64,000 nt of DNA from Mytilus trossulus. Taxonomy: Eukaryota. The stretch spans positions 17,298,001 to 17,362,000 of the forward strand of contig NC_086383.1 in NCBI RefSeq assembly GCF_036588685.1, in the 5' to 3' direction. The notes under the pieces were generated by a model. The model had not been told where the DNA came from. It did no database searches and saw only the letters and a list, made by a program, of their open reading frames with translations. Below, one piece after another: positions 3,401 to 48,451 of this stretch. Positions within the stretch are counted from its first letter, which is position 1, and the number at the start of each line of letters is the position of its first letter. Position numbers and translations under genes: made by a program.

Positions 3401-5372
3401 TTTGTTTGCTTAGTTTTTATGAGGGCTGTTTTATTGCTTAACATCTAGAACATGTTGGGGGTTCATTTCGTCTTTTAAAATCTTGGATGTTTGTATTAAA
3501 AGTAATCGGGATTTTAGATTGTAATTTTAAAGCCAGTGGTTGTTGTTATAAAATAGTCATTATATACAACCCAGGAAAGATGACTCGAAAAACGATTATT
3601 TCATTGCAGCTGTATTTTTTTAATGAATTTATTATGCATAAAATATGTAAAAAATTATTGGCGTATTGAATAAATAATAGAAAATCTGTTGCTTAACTTA
3701 GTACATATGTACTTATTTGTTATGCAAAACATTATGGTGTCCTACTTTTGTTCTTTTATCAATTATACTTATATATAATATACAGTTGAATTTGTAGATA
3801 CAAAAATTTAAAGCATTTCGAAAGTGCACTTAAACATTTTACAACTTTAGGTACATACTATAACTTACTTAAACAATTACTCCTAATTTGTTTTGATGAC
3901 TTATATCTTTAAGGTAACAAGTACTGTTAAAAAAATCTGAAATTAATTATGCATTTTTGAATATTTCTCAAAATGACACTTTACCCAGATTGATTTGGAA
4001 AAGGGGGCGTTTATTATGCAAAAATGAATTGACACTTGCAGTAAAAGACTATTCATACCCTAATTTAACAATGCGCACACAAAAACCAAACTAAAAAGAA
4101 AAAGTTTTTAAAATAATAAAGCATTATGTTTTAACAATGGAAGCAGTGCATTTGATTATACTAACATACGCTGAGTTTGATTAAAGGTGGGATTGCATTT
4201 GTTATATTAAAGGAATAAATAATTACGGTATAATTCAATGAGAAAGGAATTATACAACAGGTACAAAAAATGAAGAAAAATTTAAGAATATGAAAAAGAG
4301 GCTTAAATTTAGAAAATTTCTAACTTTCATTTATCTCATTAAAAGATGTATCAAAACTACTCTATGTGAAGATTACTATTTAAAACAAAGAAAATAAGCT
4401 GTCCTAATTAATTGTTTTCTTTGTTTTTAACAATTTCCTGTTTAATTCCCCAGTGAGAGATTTTCCAACCACTTAATGCACTCAAGCCTTTTTGTATGTT
4501 AATAATATAACTTAATGACCAACTCTTATCTATGGCTTGCCTTTTGACCCAAATATTTATTACATAACTGGTCAAGAGGAAAAATGTAAAGGCAGCTGTA
4601 TTATCAACAAAACTCTCATAAATACATAGATTTCTAAGTAAATAAGTTGTGTCATTAGTGGGGCTCAGTGAAGGGGTTTGCAATATTAATTGATGGGGAA
4701 AAGATAGGGAAAGACTGGCAGAAATTTAACAAAGCTGATATCAGTATTAGGGATAATATTCTTTGTAAAGAAGATATAAACTTTTTAAGTAGGGTTTAAG
4801 GGCTGCTATTTATAATTTTATATACAGGGAAGATTTTGGTCAGTTATTTAAGTGCTTGAAAGTTTTTTGTTAATGAATTTTTTATCTAAAGTTGCTGATC
4901 TGTAAAATTGATAATTTTAATAAAGTTGTTAAAGATTTTTGAATGAATTTTTGAAAAAAGACGTGTTTGTAGTCAAAATAAAATTATCCCTATCAATGTA
5001 AAAGCAATGTGATATTTGTTTGCTAAAGGAAAACATGTGAGGCATAATTTTGTGAGTTTTATATAAAAGAGTTAAAAACAACAAAATTAACAGGTGTTTT
5101 ATTTTCCTCTATGGACAGGTTAAGTCTGAGTGGAGGGGTTCTGATAATAGATAAAATAGAATATTTTTTTATCTTCAAAAGTCCCCTTTACACTGATCAA
5201 ATTTCAAAAATGGGTTTCAAAATTTACAACAAGTCATTACATGAACATATCTATGCTTAAACAGACCAATCTTCAATGTATGTACACTAAGTCTTGAGTT
5301 TTATAACTTTTTTTAGATAAAGTAGATAGGGGGGTGGGTCACTGATGATAAACAAATTTATCTTATTTTTAT

Positions 5373-6135
5373 CGGTGCATTACGTTTGCGCGCATTACCA
5401 TTACATTTGCGCGCAAAAATCATTACGTTTGCGCGCAGCTTTCCATTACATTTGCGCGCATTTTTTTGGCAGGTAAACTCAGGTAAAATACAGGTAATAA
5501 TGCTTATTTATCTATTAATTTGTTGAATTATTTATAAGTATCAGTACCCCTTCCGTTAGTCTTAGTATGTTGTCTCTATGAAACATTCCCCATTTCCATT
5601 CTTAATGTTATCATAAGGCACATATTTTGAAAGTATTCAATCAGTAATTTTTTAGGGAAAATACAGGTAGTAATGCTTATTTATCTATTAATTTGTTCAA
5701 TTATTTACAGGTATCAGTACCCCTTCCTTTAGTATAAGTTTCATAAGGCAGGGAAAAAAGAGATAAAACCGCAGATTTGTTTTCGATTTTCAGACACATT
5801 TCAATAAGTGTATGCAAAATTTTAAGAAAATCCGTGAAAAGCCCACTCATATATTGTAACATGACCTTAAGCTTTAACGGAGTTTTTACTTGCTTTTATA
5901 ATTCAATATGAACAGTATATAATTTGACTGATAAACAGATAAACAAACTTTTTTAAAATTAATAATTGATTAATATGAAAATACAAAAAAAAATAGTTAT
6001 TTATAACTTAATATAATTTTTATTTATACTTTTACCTGAGATTACCTGTAAAATAAATGCGCGCAAATGTAATCAAAAGCTGCGTGCAAACGTAAAATAT
6101 TTTAATCCCCAAATGCGCGCAAACGTAGTGCGCCC
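5373..6135. mobile_element. Non-autonomous DNA transposon (MITE, hAT-like 8-bp TSD) in hb intron 1
   Basis: TIRs GGTGCATTACGTTTGCGCGCA / TGCGCGCAAACGTAGTGCGCC, multiple subterminal TTACRTTTGCGCGCA repeats, identical 8-bp flanks ATTTTTAT (5365-5372, 6136-6143). Confidence 0.8.
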
Positions 6136-9100
6136 ATTTTTATGAGGTTCAAGTATCGTATTTAATCTTTAAAGTATTTTTATGGGAAAGAAGTTAAAAA
6201 CTAAACATATGGTCATTTTATTAAGTCGTGACATCAATGTGGTTGCAATGTTATATTTGTTTTTTCAAATAATTTTCCTTAATCAAATTGAGGTGCAACA
6301 ATTTACGAATAAGTTTGAGGTCATTGAGTTTATCACAGTTTTCAGTGAATGATTTGCACAAAATTCTCTTTTAATTTTAAAATCATTGTTTTCAGTGAAC
6401 CCCTATTTTGTGAGGGTGAGGCTTATAATCTTCGAATTCTTTTTCTGTCTTTTTTTCTATTTTTTTTTCTTCTTCCAAACATTGCAACTGGTTGTAAAAA
6501 ACATAAGTTATTTCTCTGCTTTTGGTCATAAATGAGAGTTGTCTTCGCTTTTTTTATTTTCTACATAAAGTTATCATTAATAAAATATTATGACTGCTGT
6601 TTTGAATGTCAAAGGACCTTCAAAGTATTTTTTGAAAAAAAATCTTGATAATTCCTAAATTTATGCATTTTCTTTTTTAAAGGCAAAACATATTCCTCTG
6701 CTCTAGAAGTTTGCATTGTTTAAAAGTTACACAAAAATGAGAATACAGATATCAGCAGCATGAATAGAATTGTACGTTTCATTCTATGCCCACAATAGTT
6801 TTCCAACTGTATATTATCTATAATAATATATGTCAGTTCCAAAAGTTAAGACCTTTCTACATGAACCAGGGCATAAAGTGTTAAGTTCCCAACCTTTCCC
6901 AATACTTAAGTATTTTTATGGGAACAAAATGGAAAATACAATGTGTCGTCAAGTTCAAGCCAGCCTAGTTTTGTCAAAAGACAGATAAGATACTCATTGT
7001 AATAAGTACCATGTATTCATTTTTATTTCTCATTATTGATTTTACTAAAACAAAGAATGAATTCAGCAAAATTGCTCTCAGATATTCGCAGAGAATTGCT
7101 TGAATTTTTGAAGTAAGTTCTGATAATTTTTATTTCTAACAATATATTTTTCATGATAAAAAGTATGTTTTGATCTGGCTGCCTGTCTGTCTGTTACTCA
7201 TGTTTATTTATTTTATCAACATTTTGATCAGGCTATTAGAGATTTCTAAAATCATATACTAATTCTATTTCTGAAATCTACTTTTACCCCCTTGACATCA
7301 GTGTCATATTTAAGACTTATGCAGGTTCCAGTGGCAATAAAAAAATGCTGAAGGTTTACCATTGGATACAAGATTGATTGGTAAAAATATGATTTGCAGA
7401 GTTATCTTTCCTTTAAAGAAGATCTTGATCAATGAATTTAGATATATAGTAATACATTATAATTTCTTTAATCTAGTTAATACCCCTGTATTTTATACTG
7501 CCTTTAAAAACATGACAAAATCTAAGATAGTTTTCTTTGGAAAATATTTTCTCACGATTTAAAAAATTTCCTTTGAGATTTAAAATTATTCTCCGGAAAG
7601 TTTCATTATATTTCGCCTACTTTTATATTACTTAGAACGAGAATTAATTTCCTTTTCTATTATATTAAAAGACATGTTATTCATTTTACTTTTTATTAAA
7701 TACAAATATTTTCTTTTTAATCTTGCTCTTTTGAAAGAATTCACTTTGCGTCTTATTTTTCGATATTTTTTGTTAACAGTACAACAATAAATGTAACAAA
7801 ACCAGGTGTTAGTATGTAAAATATATTTTCATTTCTTTTTTCTCGCCATTTCTCATTCTCGAACAATTACGATTGTATGCTGGTGTGACCAACCATAGGG
7901 AGTGTCAAAAAAGTATTAAAAACATCTTTAATTTAGTTGAAATGAAAATTATTGCATTCCTTTATTGGTATCCTCAATAACAATCTATGCAGAAAAGTTT
8001 TTTATGCGGGAATTTTTTTTCATCTTATTATTTCAATTGTATGACCCATCGACAAAGGTAATAAATAAACAGTTATCGGAGTATTTATATTAAATCCCAT
8101 ACAATAATATTTTTTACTTTGAATATATAGGAAAAGAGACATTAGATTTTCATCGAAGCAATATGTTGTTTTTCTTTTTTCCGAGGTCTTTTGAGTGTAA
8201 GATTAAATGAGCATTAGCTATTGGTTTTTTATAATACAATTGCGGAGGATAAAAGGCTTGATTTTTATATCTTTACCAATAAGAACGTAAAAAGGCTGAT
8301 ATAAAATTGAATTCACGTTGGAGCCTGTTTAATGTTGGTCATCTCACAAGTTTTGTGGCCAAGTCACAAAAACGTTTACTGATAACGATGTTAGAACACA
8401 GAAAAAGAAACAAATTTGTCAAGGATAGGCCTAGTTTAAATGTCGAAAAAACTAGATAACGATAAAAACTAGTTACCTTTGTTTAATACATTTAGTAGTT
8501 TGTACGTAGGTCAAAGTTTGGATTTTATTTATCAGGTAAGACATCAGCTAGATCAATCAATTTTGATCATTTATTCGTATTTTTTAATTTGAGGTATGTT
8601 TTTTAATTAAATATTCAATTGTATATACTCATGTTTTTAAATAATTTTTGTCATTAAGTAATATAATCTTATTGACATCAAAGTTGAATCATGCAAATAA
8701 ACTTGGTGAATTTAAAAATAAAATATTTTACAATTCGTTATGATGCATAATGTTACTGATTCAGTTACGGAATCTGTATTTAGATGTAATTCTCTGTTCT
8801 GTAAGAATATCAGAATTGATTTTGAAATAGAGTTATGTCCCTGTAATGGCAATATATAAGTACATGTAATGTATAATTTGCACAAGTTTTTGTAAATATA
8901 AAAAAAAAAAAATTCCAATCATAAGTAAAGACGGTAGTAGTCTATGATTATGTTGGAGTTTTTTTTGTTATGATATTTTTTAATGTGGATCAATTTTTAG
9001 TTTTATATGAAATAGTTTGATTTCCAATCAGTGTTTTACCTTCTTTGACTTTTATTTAAATATACCTGGTCCATTTAGATGAAAGTACCCTCAGTATTGC

Positions 9101-10042: not shown

Positions 10043-11011
10043 GTTGATTTCCGAAACTGACTTTATCTTCAGTGTGGATTTAAGTGCTTGAAGAGCAATT
10101 GTTTCTTTTTAAGTGTTTAGATCTTAAATTTTTTATGGGTTAAAACTCAAGTACGTTGGATGACAAAAAAGGTTGTTTAATCTTAGCCGCTCTGTGTTTT
10201 ATAAGCTTTGTGAACACTTGATATAAAATTTGAACCAGTGAAGTCTTGGAGTACTAAATAGCCTTAACTTGAAATGGCGGGTATGTAAAAGAATATTTTC
10301 AAACATTTTTTTTAATGTTTTTTTTTTCATATACATGTAATCATTTATCGCATTCTCATGTATTTTACACCTGTTAGAATATAGCTTTTTCTCACAGTAA
10401 ATTTGTACCACAAATATTTTTTGATGACTAAGATGTGCTTTGTTTGGTTTCCAGTTTTTTTTTTCAAAACTGAAGGTTCATCTGAACACCTGTTTTATAC
10501 TATAACGTCAAAGTCAACAACCACTTACCTAAAAGAACTTAGAACAGGATATGTCATGGTACAATCAGGATCTGAAATTTTTTGATAATTTTTCGTTTGT
10601 ACCTCTTCTCCACGAGGCTGACTTTAATTGTTTTGTACCTTAATGAGTTGAGGCTGAATTTAGTCCCCTCTGACATTGTAATACCATGATACTTTTAAGA
10701 AGGTAGAGAAAATAATGTTAAGATTTGTTCCTTGTTCAAATGTGTGAGCCTTAGCAAGGGTTACTTCCCTTGTTTTGAAATTATTAAATGATGCTTTGGT
10801 TTGTTCCAATTATATTTCAATTGGAACAAAATTTAGTTCATATGTGAGCGGAATTTGCAAGGGTTATTTCCCTTTCTTAAATTTAGTTATTCGGCTTTTA
10901 CATTCTGTAAAGGACCAAAAGGATGGTGAATTTTTCTTGGAATTAATTTAAATGAAATTTAATTTTGTAAGAGTAAGTTATTAACATATTCGTAACTTTT
11001 TTGTTTTCCAG

Positions 11012-11286
11012 GGCCGACACAGTGTCACCTCAAGTTGCAGATGTTGTTGAGAAGGTAATGTCTGAAGAGAACTCGCTGATAGAAAATCACGAAGGTTATA
11101 ATCTCTCCAACGCCAGTTTCCAGGATACCAATTCTAACTCATCTGACGATCAATCTGAATACCTGACTAACAATGTTACATCAGACTCCACAGCTACGTA
11201 CGTCAGAGATCCAAACACAGGCCACGTTACCACAATTAAGCCAGACAAAGAAGGACTTTATTTCTGCCACCTTTGCAGCTTTTCAG
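11012..11286 (+). CDS. hb: hunchback coding exon 2 (N-terminus and first half of zinc finger 1)
   Basis: Acceptor ttttttgttttccAG at 11010-11011; donor G|GTAAAT at 11287. Ends in FCHLCSFS-G, which joins exon 3 to form C-x2-C-x12-H-x3-H. Confidence 0.88.
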
Positions 11287-14009
11287 GTAAATTTTTATTA
11301 CATTACTCCTCTCTTTTTCTTCTACTGTGGATTCAATTAAAGTAGTGGGCCTTCAAATTTTTGTTCATTTTGGTGGTTAGGTCGAAGCACAAACTTAAAT
11401 GTTCAGCAAACTTCACATTTTCTATTGTCTAAGCGGAGAAAGACTGTGGCAAATTCCTTAAAAGATTTTTTCCTCAATCCAAGAAAAGACGTATCCACAA
11501 AAAAGCCAGAAAAAAAACCTAAAGCAACATGTACCTCACACACATGAATTTGTGAAAAATAGTTTTGTATTAAATAGGTTCATTTGACCACAATACTATA
11601 AGATCTATGGAAAAGTTGAGATACCAGAACAAAAGAAATCTGTTTAGAAAACAGAAACAAAAATAAGTTACATGTATTCAAGCATCTATAGTCTGGTGAA
11701 TATTTGCTCTTCTTTCAGAATTCCTTGAACTAATTTTCGCCTTATGAAACACATGTTGTTGCATAATACAACAAACCAGGTTTAATTTCAGCATAAAACA
11801 GGGCATGATTGTTCATTTTCCTAATCCCAGCAGTCGACTTATATTCCAAAATCATGTTAATTTTTCTTCTAATAAATGACAGTATTTTACCAAAGGGAAA
11901 AATATATAGCAGATAAAATGTTGATTTTATGCAGTTAATTCACTAACAAGAGTTCAAATGATTCCGAAATTATCCATAAAACATCAGGATGGCCATGTGG
12001 AGAGGTTAAAAATTAGGTCATAAATAGATATTGTTGTATAATGTTTGCTTGATAAAACCTTGTGAATAAACCATATGTTGAAAAACACGATATAACTTTG
12101 TAGATCACGGAAAGTACAAAAGTCACTTGGATAGAAAATTGTTGATCTTGTGATTGAGGGAAAGAAGGGAACACAAAAGAATAAGAAAAGTAGAATAAAG
12201 GAAGGGGGCACAGACAGGCTGGGTTCTTGGTGGCCCATTTATTAAGTTTTCATCAACATTAAAAGAGTTTAGGCAGCCTATTTTTCACAGATAGTGAACA
12301 CATTGATGTAAACAATGAAATACAGAAATATTTTGGTCACAAAATAAAATAAATATAACCTTTTAAAAAACTTGAAATTCTCACAGGTCAGCTTCAAGTC
12401 TAACAAATTTTTCGATGTGTAAATTTCAAATATTTAAAAAATATTTTGGTTGGTTTAATTTATTTCAAGTTAAAATTTATTTTCAGCATCAAATACAATA
12501 ACTTTATTTTTCTGAGGACAATTTTACCAATAATTCATTAGAAAGTAACTATTCATAAATCATTTACTACACATTAAAAATGTCCTCTCTCAGGAACAAT
12601 ATCATTATGCCATCATACTGACTAATATGGGTAGAAATTAATTCAAAAACAGAAATATGCGTATAAATGTTTTTGACATCTCAATGAACTCTTGATAGAG
12701 TCTAGCCCACGTACAATTTTGTAAAATTATACCACTTTGGGACCTCACTGATAACTTGAAACAAAAAGTCAATAAAAACACCTCTGACAAGGACGGGTCA
12801 ATTTCGTATTTATTAATTTATACAACATTTTTCAAGGTAGATTTGGTTTTTATAGCATAAAGCTTACTGCATGCATGTCCAAACTTAATTAAAAAAGAGC
12901 AGACCTTTTACGAGATCGGACATTTAAACGTGATATGTATAATATAAACGTACATGATCTTAATTGAAAAAGTTTGGATTTAATCATCGGAAATTCAATA
13001 GAATAAATATTTTGATCATTTTTTGAATGGTTCAGTACCGTTTAATAAAAACATTTTTTTATACCTTATTGCATTTTTGAATAGAGATGCACACAAATAA
13101 CTTAAAGAATTGTATAAAAAAAGAGATAAAAAACCAAGTCGTATGTAAACATGTTGTCGATCCACGTCTTAAACTGGGATGATAAAAAAAACTATAAGGT
13201 AATTTATTAAGATACTTTTAAATTAAACTTTTCCCTGTAAACAGATAAATTAAAACGAAAAAGCAAAGTAGATAAGAGGTCTTTTATGTATATTGTTTTA
13301 CACCAAAGGTCAAGTATGTGTATTGCTTTTTGTTTTTAAACTCAAGTAAAGTGTATGTAAGAATTGGACAATTTCTTTATGATCAAAGTTCATTATAAGC
13401 TTTTTAGCCTCTTTCACACATTCGTGAAATTATGAATAAGTTTATTCTTGTATCTCAATTGTATATTTCTACTTGTTAAGATAAGTGCAGTTGAACTGAA
13501 ATTATGACAAGGTCAAACGATAGATCAACATGTGATATTTTTTACGGTCATATTGTTTTTTGTTTTTCTGCTATCATCTTAGCATTAATTAATATATAAA
13601 CAGCAACACTTTTCCTTTTCGCAAAACACTCTGCATGAGAAAAAATACTCATGAGCTTTTATACTAGCTGTATCGCCAGCATTTTTGTGCAGAGATTTGT
13701 AGGGCTACTAATAAACCAGGAATCTCTTAATATCAATTATCTAGATTACAGCTAAGGGTCTGTTTTCAAAGACAGTTTGAAATTTAATAATTGGGTTTCT
13801 TCTTCAAATCTAAGGTAATTTCTTTGAATAATGAGCTATTTTGTCACCAAAAAAAAATTACAAAAGTTATACTGAAAGTTTCATCACTTTCTAAGATTTT
13901 TTGTGAGATTGGTAGCAGAGTTCATATAACTTTGGCTTTCTCAGATTCGACACAAGTCCATCAGTGACAAAAGAGGTGTCTGTCCATCCAAAGTATAAAT
14001 ATTATATGG

Positions 14010-17200: not shown

Positions 17201-18799
17201 AATTCTCTTTGATTTCTGTCACAGAAGGCTTAAGAAATAAGAAAACACCTAAGCAATGTATATGAAATCAACAAAAAAGTTTTTCATCAACAAAAGTATA
17301 ATTTAAAAGCTGATAAGAATTTTGGTCATGGTTACTTTTGACACAAACACTTCAATAAAATTTACAATAATAGACCTCAGATTTTCAAGTTATTATAAAC
17401 TTGTATAACTTTCTGTCCATTCGCATGAAAAATAAATTAAGCAGTTATAAATTACAATAATTTATAGATGGGAAACTTTATTTGTATTTGCCCGTAAAAA
17501 CTTTTAAGTATAAAACTTTACCTATGTTGACTCTAGATAACACTTATCATTGAATTTTTGATCGCTGTGGAAAGGTGCGACTCGCTGGCTATCTGTTTAA
17601 ATGACCGATTTACTGCAAATACCTAGTGATTAGTAAAATACTATATAATACCTACAAAAAATGGCTAAGGCATGTGATCTCAATTTTTATACGCCGCTTT
17701 TCTCTTCAATATCGGCAAAAAGAAAAAAAGGTTGATAGGCTGATTAACCAGTTTCCGCTACTAAAACTTGTTTTGGTTTTTAATTAAACCTCTTTGTGAA
17801 AAGTAATAATATAAAATCCAAACAAACAACATTTCTTATTTTACTATAAGTTCAGTTTAGTTAAGGGGAGACTACCCATATGAGTTTTTACACTAGATTG
17901 AATTTAGCCTCTGATTCCCATAAGTTTTTAAACAAGATATTTTGAGCTCTCTTCTTACTGTTCTATAAGTTCCTCAGAATGAAAAATAAGGCTCTAGATG
18001 TGATTAACTTTTTATTAAAAAACGAAATTCTGGTCAAATGCTAAAACAAAATGTACATATAATTTTTTTTCATCAATTATTATCTAATTTTATGGATAAA
18101 AAAGAGTTTCTATAAAAATACGTTGTAAGAATTAATACTGTTTGTTTTCGTATTTTTCAACAATGGTCATTTGGATATAACGTGAGATAAAAAGGTAAAC
18201 TGCTTTGTTTTGATTATGTACATACTAAAAGCATGCCGTAATTGGTTTTACAAATGTAAATATTTTGTTGCCTGAATTGATTTTTTCATAGTACGGCTGA
18301 ACTTTAGTCTTTTAGCTCTGACGTACTGAAAACACTTTATTTGTACTGATTTCGTCACTAATACAGTTCTATAATGAATCATGAGGGGTATAGTATGGGG
18401 TTAAAGTTTGTACAAAACTTTTTTATAAAACTATTTGATTGATCCAATTTAAGAAAACGGAATATACATGATATGATGTCATGTGATACTATAGAAATAA
18501 AAAATTGACATCTTACTTTATTTAGCATTCAATATATCACAACAATGGTAAGATTGTTTTTGTGTTGCCTCTAATTATATGCAAAAAGTGCACTTTTTTT
18601 AAAATATAGATACAATTAGAATTTGTTAGCGCCACAACATCAGAAGGGAGAAAATCCTTGAAATCAGTTTATTGAATGACTTGAAAATAAAAAAATTCAA
18701 TTCATATTCATAGGCAGCTATTTGCTTATGTTATTGAATGTTCATATTGTACATATACTATCCTACCCATTCTAATGGTTGACATTTATCTTTTTATAG

Positions 18800-19014
18800 G
18801 AAGAACCCAAGCTGATTTCGAGAATCATATGACTTGCCATTTTGAACATATTTGTCCCCACTGTGATTACAAGTCTAGAACAGAAGGCCGACTTAAGAGA
18901 CATATTAAAGATTTTCACACAGACGACCCACCAGACGGATTCGGTTCCAAAAGGAACATGGGCAGACCTAAAGTCTTCAGATGTAAACAATGTGAATTTG
19001 TTGCCACTGAAAAA
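18800..19014 (+). CDS. hb: hunchback coding exon 3 (end of finger 1, finger 2, start of finger 3)
   Basis: Acceptor tttttatAG at 18798-18799, phase 1 matching exon 2. Encodes GRTQADFENHMTCHFEHICPHCDYKSRTEGRLKRHIKDFH...FRCKQCEFVATEK; donor GTAAGT at 19015 (phase 0). Confidence 0.93.
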
Positions 19015-19532
19015 GTAAGTTTGGGAATTAAATAAGAATTGCACTAGGCAAATACTGGCTTGAATTTGTAATTCACTTGGAACCAACAAAAAATTGCATT
19101 TTATGAATGTAGCAAAAGTTATATTTGCATGAAAAACAATTTATAAAAGAAAAAGTAGATTGCCGTTGTTCAAAAGTCATAAATCATTTGAGAGAAAACA
19201 AATCTTGGTTACAAACTAAAACTAAGGGTAACACATCAACTATTAGAGGAAAACATTGGAACAACAGAAACACTGACAAACTGTAGCCAAAACAAGAAAA
19301 TATAGCAAAACATAATGAATGCATGATAGTTAATGCTATTTTAAAAAGCATGTCCTAGTAGTACACAATTATCTATTTTATATGTAAAAACAAAAAAGAG
19401 ATCTTAAAATAAACGTATGTGTCAGATTCTCTTGAAGGGTAAGCATTATACTGCAGCTTAGAAAATTATATAGTTCATATAATCTGTAAATCGATACATA
19501 TTTATATTTATGTATTTTCTTTTTTTTTTCAG

Positions 19533-21623
19533 ACTGAATTCTGGGCTCATGCTAGAGCTCACATTAAAGATGATAAAGTATTACAATGTCCACGATGTCC
19601 GTTTGTTACCGAGTATAAGCATCATTTGGAGTATCATCTTCGTAACCATTTTGGCTCAAAGCCATTCAAGTGTAACAAATGTAACTACTCATGCGTAAAC
19701 AAGTCTATGCTCAACAGCCACATGAAGTCACACACCAATGTGTATCAGTACCGATGTGCCGATTGTACGTATGCCACAAAATACTGCCACAGCCTCAAAC
19801 TTCATCTCCGTAAATATCAGCATAAACCTGCCACTGTTTTGAACTCCGATGGAAGTCTACCTCAAGGAATTGATGCTGATGCATCCGGTCTGTCATTACT
19901 TCAAAAGAGAGGTCCACCAAGAGGACCAAGAGGTCCTAGAAAGGATAAATTTGATCCGTATATGAACAGCATGTTTAATCTACCTCAGTCCCCCATTCAT
20001 GGAATGCCACCTGGAATGGGCGGAGCAATGATGTCGCCATATTGGCCATTACTCAGTCAGCTTCCGAACGGATTCCACCGCCCACCACCTCTAATTCCAA
20101 CCTCGTCACCAATGTCAATGAATCCATCAATCCATTCCCCTCAGCTACCTCAACATTTATCCTCCAAAATGGGAGCACCGAAAACTCCCGATGGAGACAA
20201 TTCTAGCAATTATCCATTTAAGTGCAATTTCTGTTGCTATGGAACCGGCAGTAAACAGGAACTATATAAACATTTAATGAAAGTTCACGCAACTGAAAAC
20301 CAGGACTTATTTTCCATGTTTGGCTTGTCCTCCGAAGCTTTACTAGAGGAACAGAACCGTAGACTCAGCCTGATGAAGCACAAAATGGAGGAGAGAAACT
20401 TAGATGATAGCTTGAATGATGAGCTTCATATACACACAGATGGTGAAGACGAGGACCAGAAATATAGTCCACATTCCTGGTCTCATCCATCACCCATTGA
20501 ACCAGCCAAGATAAATCGGAATAATGGCCGATACAGTATGCCAGAGTTGCCTGTGAATTATTACAGAAATGGAAATGCTAGTCCCAAAGATATTGGTCGG
20601 GCCGAAGGAGAAGATATCATTAAACAAATGATGAATAAATTCGGAGCTGGTTCACCCATGAATGCTGCTAGACCCAAAATGCCTCATCAACGTGAAAGCC
20701 CTCTTGACCTTACAAAGCGTAAATATCCATTCTCATCTAGTCCATTATCTCAGGAAGAAATGTACAACAGAGAAATGAATCCTGATGGTGACGCTCATTC
20801 AAGCGGGGAGAGCACAACAGCTAATGATAACAATGGCCAGAGTCCAAGAAAGAGGTCCAGAAAAGGAAAAGCTTTCAAATTAGATAGACTTTGTCTAAAA
20901 TTGCATGATAAACATGATGATGCTGAAAATGGGAGTGAAAATGAAGAGTCTGAGTTTTTAGAGAGTGAGTCTGCAGGAGACCTTCAGATTGATGAATCCA
21001 GCAACATGGATGGAGAGATGAGAAATGTAGATGAAAGAAATGAAACTGATGAAAATGGCAAAAAAGATGATGATATTGAGGAAATTAAAAATAGCCTTCA
21101 GTACCTTAATGAAGGTATGGTTAAGTCCCAAGTAGAAAAGGCACCAGAGAGAAAGTCACCCGATTCTACCAGAAATCAAAGTGGCGATGAGGTTGCTTCA
21201 AGTCAGGCTATAACTAGTAGCCAAGATGTTATTTCGTCTGCCAATCGGGAACAGGCAGAGCTGTCAATGCAGACGTCACAAGCGTTGAGACATCAAACTG
21301 AACTTGCCTGGAAGATGTTACAAAATAGTGGCAGTGGTGGACATTTTCCTTACATGTCACTGGAGCAGAATGGTCATCATCAGGATTTGGCCAAGTTAAC
21401 CACTGCGGCACAACAGATGATAGCAATGAACAATCGTAAAAGTGGACCAAACGGGAAGTATGAATGTGCCTATTGTGAAATCGCATTTAAAGACTGTGTC
21501 ATGTACACAATGCACATGGGTTACCATGGTTACAAAGATCCATTTAAGTGTAATATGTGTGGACATTGCAGCAAGGACAAAGTTGAATTCTTCCTTCATA
21601 TTGCTCGTGCCGCTCACAATTAA
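19533..21623 (+). CDS. hb: hunchback coding exon 4 (central fingers, extra finger, C-terminal finger pair)
   Basis: Acceptor poly-T-cAG at 19531-19532, in frame with ORF 19626-21623. Hunchback signatures [76 protein letters not shown] and the terminal [18 protein letters not shown]...[10 protein letters not shown]. Confidence 0.97.
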
Positions 21624-22722
21624 AGACAAAATGGCTGTTTGTGTAAAAACATTTTTTGCATGATGACATTTTTTTAACATTTTTGCAGACTTCATAACTA
21701 TTAGTGATATATAGACAAAAAATGGATATTTAAATGTTGTCTTAGGTCAAAGATTTGACCTTGTTATTGACATTTGCATTCCCAGATATTGTTTTGGCAG
21801 CATTACATCCAAGTTGTTAATACTAGTCATATAGATTGTAGATTTGTGTAAGGGAGATGATTTGTATTGTATTTATACTCCTTTTATATGTATTTTTGTG
21901 TTTTGGGTGGGTGGGATTCTTTAAAAGTACATTCATTATGGCATAGATAAATGTCCTCTGCAAGGTTGATATTTCTTTTTTCCATCATTTTTTTTAATAA
22001 AAAAGATTTGATAAATGATTGTGAAACTATCCAATTGTTCAACATCTACAAAAATACTGTTAAATAATATTATTTTGGGTGAACTTCATACAAATTTTTT
22101 TTTGCTATTTGGAAAATTTAATGAAATGATAAGATTTTTTGGGTTTTTTTTTTTTTTTTTCTATTCTGAAAAAAGTGCTCCTTTGAAGGAGGGAATTCTT
22201 TATACAGATACAGATATAGAAACTTTGTAAATAGTACACAACTAGTGCTCTCCAAGCAGACATTGTTAGTGTTATATATTTTTTGTTGTTGTATACAATG
22301 TGTCTACATCTTCAAGTTATTATGAGTTATGATATTAAATGTTGATTTAATGAATTTTAAGTTTTTTTGTGAATGATTATTTATTGAAATCCAAATGAGT
22401 AACATCTACAAAAAATTGTATTTTTTAAAAGAATACTTTGGAGATAAATATAGCATAGCATTTGGTTTTGATTATTTTAAAATTGGAGAAGAAAGGATAT
22501 TTACCTTCAATATTTTTTCTAAAAAAACTGCCCATAAGTTTAATTTTGACTTTACGGCAATTAAAAAAGAAAAATGGAAAGGGGAGGTAATTATATGTTT
22601 AGATTATTCAGGGGTGGATAACTCTTGATAATTTTAAGATTATTTTTGTAAAATAAGCCAGAAAATATATATGATTTGTTGTATTGTGTATGCATGTTGT
22701 AAGTAATATTATTGTTTAAAAT

Positions 22723-23912
22723 CTCAGGGAACATTATTATAAACAATTTTAATGCCATTATTTGCCAGAATTTGAGGTGCATCTGGGAAAGTTGTAATAA
22801 ATTTCTGGTACACTCAATGTGCATAGAAATTCGATCATTAAAATTAATTTTCCCTTAGTTACCTCAGATTAAATTTCATGTTCAGCATGTTATTTGCATA
22901 GATGAAATGTATATATGACAGATATTTTACAGGAAAACTTTTTTTTCTTTTTTTAATTCATCACTGCTAGTTGAGCACTTTTTATAACAATTTTCACTTT
23001 TTGCATTTTTAACAGTCGGGTGCTTTGCATTTGTAGTGCTATACATTTTTCATTTTTTGAGCGACTTTCATATAGAACACTTTCCCAATCTGATTATTAC
23101 CATTCTTTTCTCTATAAAAATGGATAATTGGGAAGTGAAGAAGGCATTTTTTTCAAAAAAGGGGATTAATTTTACAAAAGATCTTCTAACTTAAAAAATC
23201 TAATCATACTGAAATTTGTAACTACGCAGATGAAGACACAAATTTTGAATACGCATTTTGAACTGTTCATTTCTACATAACTTTTGATTGCAACGGTTCA
23301 GCCTATATTTTCAACCAGAAAGAATCATTTTAATATAAAGAATGAAATAGATATATAACAAATGATTTGATTGGGGTAAAGAATTCAAATGATAACTACC
23401 AAAGTCTATAAATAGATCTCAGGTTTCTAGTATTTGTTCATTCCCACACTGAGCTATAAGTGAAAAATATTCCAAGTTACTTTTGAAAAAAGAATGAAAT
23501 CCTAAATAGAATGATGCTCAATAATTACTACATGTTTTTTTTTAATGTGCAATTAATTAGATTAGTATAATATATTTAGTGAAAATAGAATAGTTATTTA
23601 ATTGGGTCATCTCAAAGCTACTAAAGCCATCTAAAGACAGGTAGTTTTATCACTCCTGCAAATCCCATGAGCAGTTTCTAAAAAAAAATCTTATTCAAAC
23701 GTAAACTTTAGCCTGAGATGATCAATCAAGCACAATTCAGGATTTTTGAGATGACCCTCTGATTAGTTAGATATATACACATTAAAATGACGGAATTCCA
23801 GTGAGGAAAAATTTAAAACTGTACTGATACGTCCTGATCACATCCTCATTGATTTAATTCAGGAATATATTAGACGACAGTATGTTATATATACCTCAGT
23901 CAAACTACCTCA
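22723..23912 (+). promoter_or_regulatory. miRNA seed sites in the putative hb 3' UTR (miR-125/lin-4 8mer; let-7 7mer-A1 x2 and 8mer)
   Basis: CTCAGGGA 22723-22730; TACCTCA 22860-22866 and 23892-23898; CTACCTCA 23905-23912. UTR extent is not known; AATAAA candidates near 23923 and 24861. Confidence 0.6.
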
Positions 23913-23959
23913 GATTTGTACAAATAAAACAGCATCTTACAGATTCTAGATACATGATA

Positions 23960-24172
23960 TACTGTGGGTTCATTTATTTTCTTTGGTATCAATTTTCGTG
24001 GATTGCTGAAAACTGGCATTGTCATGGATATTTGATTTCGTGGTTTTACCAATTTCTGTATTCAAAGCCTATTTCAAATATGTAATTCGTTGAACATTTG
24101 AGTTTGTGGTTCATCCCTACCCACGAAACCCACGAAAATTGGTATCCAACGAATTATAATGAATCTTTAGTA
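23960..24172. mobile_element. MITE with ~45-bp imperfect TIRs
   Basis: TACTGTGGGTTCAT...GGTATCAATTTTCGTGG mirrored by CCACGAAAATTGGTATCC...ATGAATCTTTAGTA. A decayed relative starts near 11322. Confidence 0.7.
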
Positions 24173-25547
24173 TATAATTCATTTTCATAGTAGTATTTGT
24201 AACATTGGAGAACTACAACCATCATGTATATGCATTGAAGAAAATCTACTCTGATTTCAATTGTCTTGTATACCTCTCTTAAATGGGCATTATTGTTTAT
24301 TTTCTGATCAATATAACATCATCCTTCATTTGAATGTCGTTTCTTAACACAAGATTATGAAATGAGATTTTAATAATGATTTTAATTTCTTTTGTTGCAC
24401 GATGAAATATATTTATAATTTTAACATAGAAAGAAATAATAGAAATTAATGGTCTTAGACTATGTCAATAGTTTAAGAATTATTTTGTTGTAATCAGATC
24501 TACAAATAATTTAAGAGAAAACATTTATAACCAAAATGTTAATCATCCATCTTCATTCTTCCTTTTATTCATGTTAAACTAAAATCTTGAACTTATTCAT
24601 TTTCCATTTTTGTTGAATTCAAGAAATCACATTACATTGTCTTGTTTATTTTTATATATATTTGCCATATTTTATTTATAATTTCATTAATCAAGCTTTG
24701 TCATTATAGATTAGTATTACACATTTTAATTAGTTTTAATCATTAATCAGTTTAGTTAATCATGATTACTGTGTTTAAGCAATGATTCCATTGTTAATTG
24801 TTTTGTGTTGATTATTGTTAGTGTAATTGCTGACTTGATGTTTAAGTTACATCCTATAAAAATAAAATTGTCAATCAACTGATATCTTCATTTATTATGT
24901 TTTCTGGTCTGTCCGTCTGTCTGTCCCTCTTCAGGTTAAAGTTTTTGGTTGAGGTAGTTTTTGTTGAAGTTGAAGTCCAATCTACTTGACATTTAGTACA
25001 CATTTTCCATATTATATGATCTTTCTAATTATAATGCCAAATTAGAGTTTTTAACCCTTTTCACGGTCCCACACTTAACATAGAAAATTGTAGTGTGGAT
25101 GGTGCATCTGTGTACTACGGACACATTCTTGTTTTGTTATTGATAATGTCATGGCATCATCACACTTTGGAGCAGTATCTGCTTACCCTTCCGGAGCACA
25201 TGAAATCACCATCAATTTTTAGTGTTACTGTTGTACCCCTATTTGTGACATTTTACCTATTCTGTTTGTTTTGTTCAAACATCGTTGTCAATATAATGGA
25301 ATTTGATGCAACGGTCATTCAAGTGAGAGGTTTAGGGCTTTAAAACCAGGTTTAATCCACCATTTTCTACATAAGAAAAAGAACATGTCTGAACCAAGTC
25401 AGGAATACGACAGTTGTTATCCATTCATTTGATGTGTTTGAGATTTTTATTATGCCGTTTAATTAGGGACATTCTGTTTTGAATTTTCCACTTCCACAAA
25501 GTTCAGTATTTTTGTGATTTAACTTTTTTTGTTTATAACCTAAACAA

Positions 25548-25630
25548 CTCTTAGGTCGTCTTTGCAGCCTCTTAGGTCGTCTTTGCAGCCTCTTAGGTCG
25601 TCTTTGCAGCCTCTTAGGTCGTCTTTGCAG
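25548..25630. repeat. 21-bp tandem repeat x4
   Basis: CTCTTAGGTCGTCTTTGCAGC repeated four times, followed by decayed copies. Confidence 0.95.
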
Positions 25631-31891: not shown

Positions 31892-32020
31892 ATAAAAAAA
31901 AGATGTGGTTTGATTGCCAATGAGACAACTCGCCACAAGATACCAAAAACGACACAGAAATTAACAACTACAGGTCACCGCACGGCCTTCAACAATGAGC
32001 AAAGCCCATATCTCAGAGTG
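31892..32020 (+). repeat. Dispersed repeat family (AAGATGTGGTATGATTGCCAATGAGACAAC type)
   Basis: The same sequence occurs in reverse orientation at ~34370-34494 and ~50340-50456. Confidence 0.75.
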
Positions 32021-32814
32021 AGCTGATTGGACTCTAAATTTATCAAAAATTACCTCGACCAAAAAAGTTAACCTGAAGCGGGACAGACGGACAAACAGAC
32101 GAACGGACGAACAAACGAACGAACAGACGCACAGACCAGAAAACCTAATGCCCATAAAAGGGGCATAAAATACAAACACAAAAAAAATTAAAAAAATTAA
32201 AAAAAAAAAACATACAACGTAACCTAGATGAAAACATTATATCATTGTAACATAGAACAAAAAGGACAAAATGGAGGGAGGTTAGGAACCATTATAGTAT
32301 ACAACATTGAGTTTGTTGTAATATAACGACAGTATCGGAACTAGGGGACAAAGGCCGCCGCCCTGTTATAAAACTTTACGTATATTCTAGTTTATTGAAT
32401 GCGTATACTGCTTACAGGTATCACACTAAACGTTCCCGGCTTGACAGGTGCCCCCATCGCTTTATCAAAACCATGGTTCCGCACCAGTATGTAGCAATGG
32501 AGAGTACAACATTAAAGGATAATACTAAAGGTAATTTAGGGATATGTTATTGTGGTGATAATAAGACTAGGGACCATTATAGTAAAAAAAAACTTGGTTG
32601 ATTTTACATGAAAGAAGTTACACGGGGTGCTCATTTTCAAATTTCCGCTGTTGTACTTGTTTGACTTTATAACTATTTTGATCTGAGCGTCACTAATGAG
32701 GCTGCCGTATTCAATCATAATTCTGGAACCTTTGATAACTATTTTTAATGTTATCTCACAAACCTCTTTTTCTTTCTTTTTCCAAGATTACGTTTTCTTA
32801 TATTCTTTTTTATA

Positions 32815-33650
32815 ACCACCTCTATATCCCAAATACCCTTTTCTTACCCCTTATATATCACATGCCTACATTTTAAACCCTCTATCTCATATACCAACTT
32901 CTTACCCCTCATATATCTCATGCCCACTTTTTACCTCCTCTATCTCATATACCCACTATTTACCCCTCATCTCTCACAAGCAACTTTTTACCTCCTCTAT
33001 CTCATATACCTACTTCTTACCCCTCATAGCTCACAAGCAACTTTTTACCTCCTCTATCTCATATACCCACTTCTTATCCCTCATAGCTCACATGCCACTT
33101 TTTACCTCCTCTATCTCATTTACCCACTTCTTACCCCTCAAAGCTCACATGCCACTTTTTACCTCCTCTATCTCATATACCAACTTCTTACCCCCCATAG
33201 CTCACATGCCACTTTTTACCTTTTCTATCTTATATACCCACTTTTTACCCCTTATATCTCACATGCCCATTTTTACCTCCTCTATCTCACATACCCTATT
33301 CTTACCCCTTATATATCACATGCATACATTTTAAACCCTCTATCTCATATACCCACTTCTTACCCCTCATATCTCTCATGCCCACATTTTACCTCCTCTA
33401 TCTCATTTACCCACTTTTTACCCCTCATATCTTACATGCCCATTTTTTACCTCCTCTATCTCATATACCCACTTCTTACCCCTCATAGCTCACATGCCAC
33501 TTTTTACCTCCTCTATCTCATTTACCCACTTCTTACCCCGTATATCTCACGTGCCCACTTTTTACCTCCTCTATCTCATATACCCACTTCTTATCCCTTA
33601 TATCTCATGTACCCACTTTTTACCTCCTATATCTTACACCCCCCACTTCT
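32815..33650. repeat. 57-bp pyrimidine-rich minisatellite (~14 units)
   Basis: Unit ~TTTTTACCTCCTCTATCTCATATACCCACTTCTTACCCCTCATAGCTCACATGCCAC; produces the 19-aa-periodic spurious ORF 32920-33699. Confidence 0.93.
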
Positions 33651-33879
33651 TTTGCCACTAGATCCTGCTCCCCAGAATTGTGTCATCCCACTTGCCTGAA
33701 ATGAGGGTTTACTTAGACAGTCCACTTTTCACTATATAACTCATCGTTTTTTTAGTCAAACACAATCATTGATATAAAGTTTATATTCCCTAATGTCCAT
33801 TTCAGAGCATTACACATGGACCACTTTTGATATTGTATCGCAGTTTAACAAACAATCTTTTTAAAAGAGTTTTTTTCTC

Positions 33880-34494
33880 TGGCTGTTTATGACGTTTTGA
33901 CACTAAATCCATTGGATGTTGGATGTATACGGATTGATAGTTTAGTCTTAGATGCATGATTTGTTTTATTAGTTGTTAGTGGATTTGAACTAGCTGTCAG
34001 ATAACTGCTAGTACTCTCAGATCTGTTCATTGTGTCGGGATGTATAAGTACCCGGCCACGTCCACTTGTATTTTTGTCCATCTGATGAGTTAAGCCTTTT
34101 CAACTGATTTATATAGTTTGTTCTTATGTTGTACTGTTATATCACTGTCCCAGGTTAGGGGGAGGGTTGGGATCCCGCTAACATGTTTAACCCGTCACAT
34201 TATTTATGTATGTGCCTGTCCCAAGTCAGGAGTCTGTAATTCAGTGGTTGTCGTTTGTTTATGTGTTACATGTCTGTTTTTCGTTCATTTTTTTTTACAT
34301 AAATAGGGCCGTTAGTTTTCTCTTTTGAATTGTTTTACATTGTCTTATCGGGTTTTTTTATAGCTGACTATGTGGTATGGGCTTTGTTCATTGTTGAAGG
34401 CCGTACGGTGACCTATAGTTGTTAATGTCCGTGTCATTTTGGTCTTTTGGATAGTTATCTCATTGGCAATCATACCACATCTTCTTTTTTATAT
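33880..34494 (-). repeat. Longer copy of the dispersed repeat family
   Basis: Ends in CATTGGCAATCATACCACATCTTCTTTTTTATATT, the reverse complement of the copy at 31892; internal blocks are shared with 50228-50456. Confidence 0.7.
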
Positions 34495-44440: not shown

Positions 44441-45159
44441 ATGTCACGAAAGAGAGAAGATTCTTTACGCTTTTACGAATACTTGTGTCAGAAAATTGGT
44501 TCTGAAGAGGATGTTAAAGCTAGACGACTAACTTCTATTGTTTGTGATATGGGGAATGTATGTTTTAATCAATTCAGAAGTGGGAGTAACGGCGAAGGAC
44601 TACATTTAAAAGGTAGTGATATTGATGTCATGATAATAAATTGCCAGTGTGTAGTGTATGAAAGTTTTAGTGATATTCGTATTGAAAATAAGAAAAAAAA
44701 GTTCACTTTAGTGATGGACACAGAAGATACGCAGCCATGTTTTACTAAACTAAGAATTCTATGTAAATGTACCCCTACATGTATTTCTGATAAACTAGCA
44801 TACGATGACCACAAAGGTAGAGTGCTTTCCAGCAAAACGTTTAAAGAGATTCAACTTGATAACTGTTCCACAAAATTAAAACCTATTAACAAAATACATG
44901 GTCCATGTTTAACAGACGAATTGGGCCAAATAGATTTAGCGGTATGCCTCAAGTGTGATAAATGGATATCTCAATCAGAACAATGGATAAAAAGATCCCG
45001 TGGAAAATGGCCCACGTCTGATGTAATTTCAAAAATCATATCTTGTGGTGTTTTGTTTGTACCAGTAGGCATCAAAGAATCAATTAATGAACACATTGAA
45101 TGGAGAATGTCATATTCCGTAGCGGAAAAAATTCTAATATTTTCTTTCAATCATACACA
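44441..45159 (+). pseudogene. cGAS-like receptor (Mab-21/cGLR nucleotidyltransferase), 5' part, disrupted by LTR insertion
   Basis: NTase motif SGSNGEGLHLKGSDIDVM, third acidic residue in QIDLAVCL, Mab-21 motifs HGP, W..RSR..WP, GVLFVPVG and EWRMSYSVAEKILIFSFNHT. Confidence 0.92.
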
Positions 45160-45746: not shown

Positions 45747-45954
45747 TTTGGTAGTGCGGGTGGGGTGTGGAATTCTAAAGCAGCTTTTCTGGTTTGTAAC
45801 TGAACTAAATTATACTAAGAAATGGAGTAGACATTTGAGTCAATACTTGTTGTAACTGAATATGACAGTCCTCAGCAGACCAGTTTTGAATAGTTATTTG
45901 TGGGGTATTTTATTTTCATAGTTTGGTTCATTTTGTAAATGTATATTTATAGTC

Positions 45955-48447: not shown

Positions 48448-48451
48448 CACA

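What the first reader, a model, noticed from the sequence alone, without database searches (positions are those of the whole stretch)
22723..24276. lin-4/miR-125 and let-7 sites downstream of hb: a candidate heterochronic circuit in a mollusc
Seen: miR-125/lin-4 8mer CTCAGGGA (22723), let-7 7mer-A1 TACCTCA (22860, 23892), let-7 8mer (23905, only 13 nt from the previous site, within cooperative distance) and a 6mer (24271). Rough expectation at ~30% GC over 2.3 kb is ~0.1 TACCTCA and ~0.01 CTCAGGGA. Known: nematode hbl-1 carries let-7-family and lin-4 sites in its 3' UTR, and let-7 and miR-125 are clustered and expressed late in development across bilaterians. Inference: with the CDS sites, this suggests the let-7/miR-125 -| hunchback timing switch is ancestral to protostomes and could act at the larva-to-juvenile transition in bivalves. 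I do not know of this being described in molluscs.
Basis: partly seen in the sequence, partly recalled or inferred. Interest (0 to 1): 0.82.

Follow-up and report, generated by a model that had tools for sequence, protein, structure and literature searches.

The report
let-7 and miR-125 sites on mussel hunchback
[quoted passage not shown] The same sites recur behind hunchback genes of unrelated worms, clams and arthropods, so the worm let-7/hunchback link is probably ancient in protostomes.

Summary
Every seed match sits at the stated coordinate downstream of the last exon of the Mytilus (trossulus-like) hunchback gene.

Between the stop codon (21621-23) and the AATAAA at 23923, TACCTCA occurs 3 times against 0.076 expected, and CTCAGGGA once against 0.010. 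Three more let-7 8mers lie in the coding exon, all on Leu-Pro-Gln codons. That makes 6 TACCTCA in 4.4 kb of mRNA (P about 4e-8).

The region is non-coding, has no repeat copy elsewhere in the window, and matches no Rfam family.

As an independent test I fetched 12 hunchback loci (11 taxa) from metagenomes, chosen by protein homology only. Within 3 kb after their stop codons:
- The let-7 8mer occurs 5 times in 4 taxa against 0.14 expected (P 4e-7). It is the commonest of its 420 base permutations.
- miR-125 7mer-m8 occurs 4 times against 0.41 expected.
- Carriers include a heterodont bivalve, a nematode and an annelid.

The best reading is genuine microRNA response elements, a new member of the C. 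elegans hbl-1 kind.

The 6mer at 24271 probably lies outside the transcript.

The parts
19533..21620 (+). Last coding exon of hunchback (696 codons; middle four and C-terminal two C2H2 fingers)
   Evidence: Translation. Pfam zinc-finger families. 99.9% identical to M. trossulus LOC134690799 over 697 aa. Upstream exons map to 11004-11291 and 18793-19017.
19857..19864 (+). let-7 8mer CTACCTCA in the CDS, codons Leu-Pro-Gln of the conserved DGSLPQG motif
   Evidence: The protein motif is nearly invariant in the aligned bivalves and abalone. The heterodont bivalve L002 codes it TTA CCA CAA, so the nucleotide site is not conserved there.
19980..19987 (+). let-7 8mer CTACCTCA in the CDS (NLPQSP)
20145..20152 (+). 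let-7 8mer CTACCTCA in the CDS (QLPQHL)
   Evidence: All 3 LPQ tripeptides use CTA-CCT, although CTA makes up 8.5% of the other Leu codons and CCT 22% of the other Pro codons. The joint probability cubed is 7e-6.
21621..21623 (+). Stop codon TAA
21624..23950 (+). Inferred long 3'UTR (about 2.3 kb, 27% GC), ending after the AATAAA at 23923
   Evidence: No ORF of note on either strand. No Rfam match. No repeat copy elsewhere in the window up to 24075. The extent is inferred, not shown.
21996..22001 (+). Proximal AATAAA. If this is the only signal used, the UTR lacks all the sites.
22723..22730 (+). miR-125/lin-4 8mer CTCAGGGA (plus T at 22722 matching position 9), 66 nt upstream of the AATAAA at 22796
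   Evidence: It gives the strongest predicted miR-125 duplex in the UTR, -16.9 kcal/mol. Flanks are 83% AU. The same 9-mer TCTCAGGGA lies downstream of the hunchback stop codon in bivalve L002.
22796..22801 (+). Middle AATAAA
22860..22866 (+). let-7 7mer-A1 TACCTCA, immediately followed by ATTAAA at 22868
23892..23898 (+). let-7 7mer-A1 TACCTCA, first of the closely spaced pair
23905..23912 (+). let-7 8mer CTACCTCA, second of the pair, 11 nt upstream of AATAAA
   Evidence: It gives the strongest predicted let-7 duplex in the UTR, -19.8 kcal/mol, with 3' pairing into the neighbouring site.
23923..23928 (+). Distal AATAAA, the inferred end of the long UTR isoform
   Evidence: A GU/U-rich stretch follows. 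Repeat-like DNA starts just beyond it.
23975..24156 (.). MITE-like inverted repeat (30-nt arms, 122 nt apart). It probably marks intergenic DNA.
   Evidence: Part of it matches 11369-11420 on the other strand.
24271..24276 (+). let-7 6mer TACCTC, probably outside the transcript and not part of the element
   Evidence: The next polyadenylation hexamer is 590 nt away.

Best explanation
The 2.3 kb after the stop codon of the Mytilus hunchback gene is its long 3'UTR. The mRNA carries genuine microRNA response elements:
- one miR-125/lin-4 8mer at 22723;
- three let-7 sites in the UTR, at 22860 and a pair 14 nt apart at 23892 and 23905, just upstream of the distal AATAAA;
- three let-7 8mers inside the coding exon.

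Proposed mechanism: let-7 and miR-125 are co-expressed from the let-7 complex. As they accumulate late in larval life, Argonaute complexes bind these sites and lower hunchback mRNA stability and translation. This is what let-7-family microRNAs and lin-4 do to hbl-1 in C. elegans.

Shown here: the sites exist, they are far above chance, they are strand-specific, and the same two seeds are enriched behind hunchback genes of unrelated protostomes.

Inferred: the UTR extent, binding, repression and the developmental timing role.
For: Window:
- TACCTCA occurs 3 times against 0.076 expected in 21624-23950 (P 7e-5). With the overlapping ACCTCAG it is the most over-represented non-homopolymer 7-mer there.
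- There are 6 TACCTCA and 4 CTACCTCA in 19533-23950. Each is the top word of its 210 or 420 base permutations, and Poisson P is 4e-8.
- In the coding exon, all three LPQ tripeptides use the rare CTA-CCT pair (7e-6).
- The sites have AU-rich flanks, and the 8mers give the strongest predicted let-7 and miR-125 duplexes in the UTR.
- The let-7 pair spacing of 14 nt is at the lower edge of the cooperative range in PMC1874663.
- All three UTR let-7 sites lie 8-31 nt upstream of a polyadenylation hexamer.
- The region is non-coding, has no repeat copy elsewhere in the window, and has no Rfam match.

Independent loci (11 taxa), sense strand within 3 kb after the stop codon:
- CTACCTCA occurs 5 times against 0.14 expected (P 4e-7), against 1 on the antisense strand (0.22 expected).
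- CTCAGGG occurs 4 times against 0.41 expected (P 8e-4), with 0 on the antisense strand.
- CTCAGGGA occurs 2 times against 0.10 expected.
- CTACCTCA ranks third among 8-mers present in at least 3 loci, behind only (TA)n. It is the top word of its 420 permutations.
- The heterodont bivalve L002 has the same order as the mussel: miR-125 8mer, then let-7 8mer, then a polyadenylation hexamer.

Literature:
- hbl-1 has four strong let-7-family seed sites (PMC1043860).
- These three microRNAs rise across gastropod metamorphosis.
Against: - No transcript evidence was available. AATAAA hexamers at 21996 and 22796 could end the UTR before some or all of the sites.
- No orthologous Mytilus or mytilid DNA could be fetched, so positional conservation is untested.
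- The mussel UTR and the downstream region of bivalve L002 do not align apart from the seeds.
- The UTR ends of the metagenomic loci are unknown.
- Loci L001, L004, L005, L010 and L012 have no 7mer or 8mer sites.
- Coding-region site 1 is not conserved in L002.
- No miR-100 site is present.
Confidence: 0.65

Rival explanations
1. The sequence motifs are real but not functional in the mussel. Transcripts would polyadenylate at the proximal AATAAA (21996), so the UTR sites lie in intergenic DNA. The three CDS 8mers would merely reflect how LPQ happens to be coded.
For: A canonical AATAAA lies 373 nt after the stop codon. No transcript data could be obtained. The CDS sites all encode the same tripeptide, and the first is not kept at the nucleotide level in L002.
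Against: Untranscribed DNA would give no reason for a 40-fold, strand-specific excess of exactly the let-7 word. It would also not explain the same excess behind 11 unrelated hunchback genes. CTA-CCT for all three LPQ has probability 7e-6 under the exon's own codon usage. Repeat-like DNA begins only after 23975.
Confidence: 0.15
2. Pure coincidence in AT-rich non-coding DNA, picked out because the reader was looking for known seeds.
For: CTCAGGGA alone is unremarkable window-wide (1 against 0.58 expected). As an unbiased 7-mer screen, the UTR-only P of 7e-5 would not survive correction for 16,384 words.
Against: With the CDS included, P is 4e-8. The pre-specified test on independent loci gives P 4e-7 for let-7 and 8e-4 for miR-125, with clean antisense and permutation controls.
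Confidence: 0.04
3. The word (C)TACCTCA(G) is bound by something other than let-7: an RNA-binding protein, another small RNA, or a DNA-level element. The match to the let-7 seed would be incidental.
For: All three mussel UTR copies extend to TACCTCAG, and two extend to TACCTCAGATT. No binding data exist.
Against: In the other taxa the shared core is exactly the 8-nt let-7 site, with variable flanks. Five of the seven 7mer-A1 matches there are full 8mers. A second, unrelated seed from the same microRNA cluster (miR-125) is co-enriched in the same regions. The let-7/hbl-1 precedent exists.
Confidence: 0.08
4. The sites were brought in by a transposable element or local duplication and carry no selected function.
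For: Small MITE-like inverted repeats lie in and next to the region (23604-23757 and 23975-24156). Two sites share an 11-mer, TACCTCAGATT.
Against: None of the sites lies inside either inverted repeat. No copy of 21624-24075 occurs elsewhere in the 64-kb window. Nothing beyond the 11-mer is shared between the site contexts. This reading cannot explain the cross-taxon enrichment.
Confidence: 0.03

Closest known systems
C. elegans hbl-1 (lin-57) 3'UTR, repressed by let-7-family microRNAs and lin-4 (Abrahante et al. 2003; Lin et al. 2003, as cited in PMC1043860)
   Same: The target is the hunchback orthologue. There are several let-7-family seed sites plus a lin-4/miR-125 site on the same mRNA, and the UTR is long.
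   Different: The mussel has one let-7 rather than a four-member family. It has three additional let-7 8mers in the coding region. There is no functional, temporal or genetic evidence here, and the site positions are not alignable with those in the worm.
let-7 / lin-41 (TRIM71), the classic deeply conserved let-7 target pair
   Same: It is a microRNA-target link kept across phyla even though the UTRs themselves are unalignable. Presence of sites, not their position, is what is conserved.
   Different: It involves a different target gene. lin-41 conservation extends to vertebrates and has been tested experimentally. The hunchback link is so far seen only as sequence enrichment in protostomes.
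Drosophila let-7-Complex co-targeting of chinmo by let-7 and miR-125 (PMC4979967)
   Same: Two co-transcribed heterochronic microRNAs have sites on one zinc-finger temporal transcription factor mRNA.
   Different: chinmo is a BTB-zinc-finger gene unrelated to hunchback. That system has been demonstrated genetically.
Coding-region let-7 sites such as those reported in Dicer (recalled from memory, Forman et al. 2008; not checked here)
   Same: let-7 seed matches sit inside an ORF and are superimposed on conserved amino acids.
   Different: This is a lead from memory only. The efficacy of CDS sites is usually lower, and nothing was tested here.

Membership tests
hunchback (hb/hbl-1) orthologue | Four middle C2H2 fingers plus two C-terminal C2H2 fingers, and best similarity to named hunchback proteins | tested here: met
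   Pfam zf-C2H2 and zf-H2C2_2. 99.9% identical to M. trossulus LOC134690799, and other named hits are 'protein hunchback-like' from many molluscs, annelids, brachiopods and arthropods. Both finger blocks are conserved in the alignment. It falls within bivalves in the tree.
Canonical let-7 microRNA response element | Perfect complement to let-7 seed nucleotides 2-7 or 2-8, and/or A opposite position 1 | tested here: met
   Two 7mer-A1 and one 8mer in the putative UTR, and three 8mers in the CDS.
Canonical let-7 microRNA response element | The site lies within the mature mRNA (3'UTR) of the target | not testable with these tools
   The CDS sites are certainly in the mRNA.
Canonical let-7 microRNA response element | Preferential conservation of sites in orthologous mRNAs | tested here: inconclusive
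   Presence-level conservation is strong: the 8mer occurs 5 times against 0.14 expected in 11 independent hunchback loci, including another bivalve. Positional conservation in close relatives could not be tested, and 5 loci lack 7mer or 8mer sites.
Canonical let-7 microRNA response element | The cognate microRNA is expressed in the organism | not tested
   [quoted passage not shown] No microRNA gene lies in the window (Rfam).
Canonical let-7 microRNA response element | Seed-dependent repression of the target | not testable with these tools
   Needs a reporter, CLIP or knock-down experiment.
miR-125/lin-4 response element | Seed complement CTCAGGG(A) on the sense strand of the target mRNA, recurring in orthologues | tested here: met
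   8mer plus position 9 at 22722-22730. The same 9-mer is in bivalve L002. There is an 8mer in annelid-like L009 and 7mer-m8 sites in L003 and L006/L007. Overall CTCAGGG occurs 4 times against 0.41 expected, with 0 antisense. The support is weaker than for let-7.
Heterochronic let-7/lin-4 -| hbl-1 timing circuit | Temporal down-regulation of hunchback that depends on these microRNAs, with heterochronic phenotypes on perturbation | not testable with these tools

The most novel reading that the evidence does not exclude
Repression of hunchback by let-7 and miR-125 is an ancestral protostome regulatory link, or at least one shared by Spiralia and Nematoda. It would have been maintained for over 500 million years by turnover of sites in unalignable UTRs, and in some lineages (Mytilus, the nematode-like L003) reinforced by let-7 sites written into the coding sequence. 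In bivalves it would switch hunchback off as the let-7 complex comes on around metamorphic competence. Alternative polyadenylation (21996, 22796, 23923) would decide how many sites an isoform carries.
Probability: 0.4. Interest if true: 0.75.

Novelty: new member of a known kind. Interest (0 to 1): 0.6.

Why it matters
Apart from let-7/lin-41 and lin-28, little of the C. elegans heterochronic pathway has been shown to hold outside nematodes. It is not known whether hunchback's temporal role in worms and flies reflects shared microRNA control.

A sequence-level signal in molluscs, annelids, a nematode and other protostomes makes this directly testable, because bivalve larval time-courses and small-RNA data already exist. 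It would add a second deeply conserved let-7 target. It also offers a candidate molecular handle on larval-to-juvenile timing in farmed bivalves.

The full-text searches made here turned up this link only for C. elegans hbl-1 and no description of it outside C. elegans.

Tried and rejected
I therefore could not fetch the M. californianus, M. galloprovincialis or M. edulis loci, nor the 78%-identical mytilid cluster (P0002 group). Positional conservation and Logan RNA contigs stayed out of reach.
- The single metagenome scan returned no close mytilid, only 12 distant hunchback loci.
- Scans of genome contigs and viral contigs found no hunchback.
- Rfam found nothing in the window (gathering thresholds) or in 21500-24500 (permissive E-value).
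- Aligning the mussel UTR to the downstream region of bivalve L002 gave only short chance-level matches besides the seeds.
- Pumilio elements (UGUANAUA) are not enriched across the loci.
- There is no miR-100 seed match.
- The L003 coding-region let-7 cluster is not homologous to the mussel LPQ sites.
- L006 and L007 are the same species (99.5% identical) and were counted once.
- The 'antisense top list' is only the mirror image of the sense list and is uninformative.
- The first tree run timed out, so FastTree was used instead. L005, L007, L008 and L011 remain unplaced.
- Literature searches for let-7 sites in non-nematode hunchback genes found nothing. A search for bivalve hunchback expression timing gave nothing usable.
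- Only the last exon was searched as protein, by reference. The spliced, joined gene model was not built or searched.
- No contig looked human.
Full report
**What is in the window**

The finding lies just downstream of the last coding exon of a hunchback gene on the + strand. Translating 19533-21620 gives 696 codons with four middle and two C-terminal C2H2 fingers, ending at TAA 21621-21623.

The word search returns M. trossulus LOC134690799 at about 100% identity. It also returns 'protein hunchback-like' from many molluscs, and hunchback from brachiopods, phoronids, annelids and arthropods. The cluster holds M. edulis, M. galloprovincialis and M. californianus hunchback.

tblastn places the RefSeq protein on 11004-11291, 18793-19017 and 19530-21620, with 99.86% identity in the last exon. 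Only this exon was searched, by reference. The joined spliced model was not built or searched.

**Check of the observation**

- CTCAGGGA at 22723
- TACCTCA at 22860
- TACCTCA at 23892
- CTACCTCA at 23905
- TACCTC at 24271

From the stop codon to 23950 (2327 nt, 27% GC), an order-1 Markov model expects 0.076 TACCTCA, 0.008 CTACCTCA and 0.010 CTCAGGGA. Observed counts are 3 (P 7e-5), 1 and 1.

TACCTCA and the overlapping ACCTCAG are the most over-represented non-homopolymer 7-mers in that stretch. Window-wide, TACCTCA occurs 18 times against 6.0 expected, and 0 of 100 shuffles reach 18. Six of the 18 lie on the + strand between 19858 and 23912.

The three coding-region copies are all full 8mers and all encode Leu-Pro-Gln as CTA-CCT-CAR. 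CTA makes up only 8.5% of the exon's other Leu codons and CCT 22% of its other Pro codons. Three out of three therefore has probability about 7e-6.

Over the mRNA segment 19533-23950:
- TACCTCA (6 copies) is the commonest of its 210 base permutations.
- CTACCTCA (4 copies) is the commonest of its 420 base permutations.
- Poisson P is 4e-8.

**Anatomy of the downstream region**

Nothing in 21624-24400 looks coding on either strand. Rfam finds nothing even at permissive thresholds.

AATAAA occurs at 21996, 22796, 23923 and 24861, and ATTAAA at five further places. Relative to these hexamers:
- The miR-125 8mer sits 66 nt upstream of the 22796 hexamer.
- The 22860 let-7 site abuts ATTAAA at 22868.
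- The let-7 pair lies 11-31 nt upstream of AATAAA 23923, which is followed by a GU/U-rich stretch.

Up to 24075 no part of the region has a copy elsewhere in the window. A MITE-like inverted repeat occupies 23975-24156, and dispersed repeat fragments start at 24894.

I therefore infer a long UTR isoform ending near 23945. Shorter isoforms could carry no sites or only the miR-125 site. The 24271 6mer is probably outside the transcript.

The two 8mers give the strongest predicted duplexes with let-7 and miR-125 in the UTR: -19.8 kcal/mol (let-7, site 23905) and -16.9 kcal/mol (miR-125, site 22723). The let-7 8mer can also pair through the microRNA's 3' half into the neighbouring site. Site flanks are 68-83% AU, and there is no miR-100 seed match.

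The 14-nt seed-to-seed spacing of the pair is at the lower edge of the cooperative range described in PMC1874663.

**Related sequences**

Orthologous Mytilus and mytilid loci, and any RNA-derived contigs, could not be fetched.

L006 and L007 are one species, leaving 11 independent taxa selected purely on protein homology.

A FastTree phylogeny places them as follows:

| Locus | Placement | Support |
|---|---|---|
| L002 | inside heterodont bivalves | 100 |
| L003 | sister to the nematode Trichuris | 100 |
| L001, L009 | with annelids | 93 |
| L010 | with crustaceans | 81 |
| L004, L012 | among insects | 90 (insect clade); 98 for L012 + louse |
| L005, L007, L008, L011 | unplaced | - |

Sites on the sense strand downstream of each stop codon:

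| Locus | let-7 | miR-125 |
|---|---|---|
| L002 | 8mer at +2968, 129 nt before ATTAAA | 8mer at +2130 |
| L003 | 8mer at +115 | 7mer-m8 at +161 |
| L006/L007 | 8mers at +268 and +356; 7mer-A1 at +727 | 7mer-m8 overlapping the second let-7 8mer (CTACCTCAGGG) |
| L008 | 7mer-A1 at +42 | none above 6mer |
| L009 | none | 8mer at +435, 10 nt before AATAAA |
| L011 | 8mer at +1279 | none above 6mer |
| L001, L004, L005, L010, L012 | no 7mer or 8mer | no 7mer or 8mer |

**Statistics on the independent set (18 kb, at most 3 kb per locus)**

| Word | Observed | Expected | P | Antisense observed |
|---|---|---|---|---|
| CTACCTCA | 5 | 0.14 | 4e-7 | 1 (0.22 expected) |
| TACCTCA | 7 | 0.85 | 3e-5 | 2 (1.09 expected) |
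| CTCAGGG | 4 | 0.41 | 8e-4 | 0 |
| CTCAGGGA | 2 | 0.10 | 0.005 | 0 |

In an unbiased ranking of all 8-mers present in at least three loci, CTACCTCA comes third, behind only TATATATA and ATATATAT. Among the 420 permutations of its own bases it is the single most frequent: 5 copies, the next best has 3, and 340 have none. TACCTCA is top of 210. CTCAGGG is second of 420, behind a word that belongs to a tandem repeat.

Five of the seven 7mer-A1 matches are full 8mers.

The mussel UTR and the L002 downstream region share no alignable sequence beyond the seeds, including the 9-mer TCTCAGGGA. This is the pattern expected for site maintenance by turnover, not for retained homology.

**Interpretation**

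The simplest account is that hunchback mRNAs in many protostomes are under selection to carry let-7 and miR-125 sites, and that the mussel gene is a well-endowed example.

The mechanism would be that known for C. elegans hbl-1, which has four strong let-7-family seed sites and is a lin-4 and let-7 target (PMC1043860; bioRxiv 10.1101/698977). The cognate microRNAs exist in Mytilus (PMC7773633). [quoted passage not shown]

What remains inferred is the UTR extent, actual binding and repression, and the developmental stage at which it acts.

Rivals considered:
- Non-functional motifs outside the transcript: 0.15.
- Another factor recognising the word: 0.08.
- Chance: 0.04.
- Transposable-element origin: 0.03.

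The enrichment supports an old and widespread link, but five loci (mostly arthropod) lack sites. UTR ends of the metagenomic loci are unknown. The first mussel coding site is not conserved at the nucleotide level in L002, which uses TTA CCA CAA for the same SLPQG.

The nematode-like L003 has its own cluster of three TACCTCA within 32 nt of coding sequence, in three different reading frames. It lies N-terminal to the fingers and is not homologous to the mussel sites. Coding-region sites therefore look lineage-specific.

**Novelty and score**

The full-text searches found the let-7/hunchback link described only for C. elegans. They found nothing for molluscs or other non-nematode protostomes. 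The library misses many subscription papers, so prior mention cannot be excluded.

I rate this a new member of a known kind. It is a solid, testable candidate for a second deeply conserved let-7 target, but not a new mechanism. Interest is 0.6.

Noticed in passing
L003:3041-3072 (CDS of the nematode-like hunchback, ORF 2069-6151): Three TACCTCA let-7 7mer-A1 matches lie within 32 nt of coding sequence, each in a different reading frame (EYLK / SLTS / SLPQ). They are N-terminal to all zinc fingers. This suggests nucleotide-level selection for let-7 sites inside the ORF, independent of the mussel LPQ sites.
   Followed up: partly
L006:1969-1979 and L007:1898-1908: A composite site CTACCTCAGGG, in which a let-7 8mer overlaps a miR-125 7mer-m8 by four bases. 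The two microRNAs of one cluster would compete for, or alternate on, the same stretch. The two loci are the same species (99.5% identical downstream).
   Followed up: partly
L002:11058-11070: TGTACATAGTTGT (UGUACAUA plus GUUGU) resembles the Pumilio/Nanos response element of insect hunchback. It lies about 50 nt 3' of the let-7 8mer in the heterodont-bivalve hunchback downstream region. UGUANAUA is not enriched across the loci overall (the mussel UTR has 2 against 0.40 expected).
   Followed up: partly
window 23604-23757 and 23975-24156: Two small inverted-repeat (MITE-like) elements. One lies inside the inferred UTR and one just beyond the distal AATAAA. Part of the second matches 11369-11420 on the opposite strand, in a hunchback intron.
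   Followed up: partly
window 25548-25630: A perfect tandem repeat of a 21-nt unit, 4 copies at 100% identity.
   Followed up: no
window 44441-49694: ORFs with the Mab-21 nucleotidyltransferase domain (44441-45184) and the Mab-21 C-terminal domain (48453-49694) are separated by a Ty3/gag-like ORF (45955-46749). This may be a cGAS-like gene interrupted by a retrotransposon, or neighbouring fragments.
   Followed up: partly
window 32001-34000: A strong negative GC skew (-0.40) and raised GC (37%) surround an ORF of 259 aa (32920-33699, + strand) that has no Pfam match.
   Followed up: no
window 23496-23538 and L002 +3539..+3572 after the stop codon: Two exact 12-mers (GAAATCCTAAAT and ACTACATGTTTT) are shared in the same order and at similar spacing between the mussel UTR and the L002 downstream region. 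This could be chance or a small conserved element.
   Followed up: no
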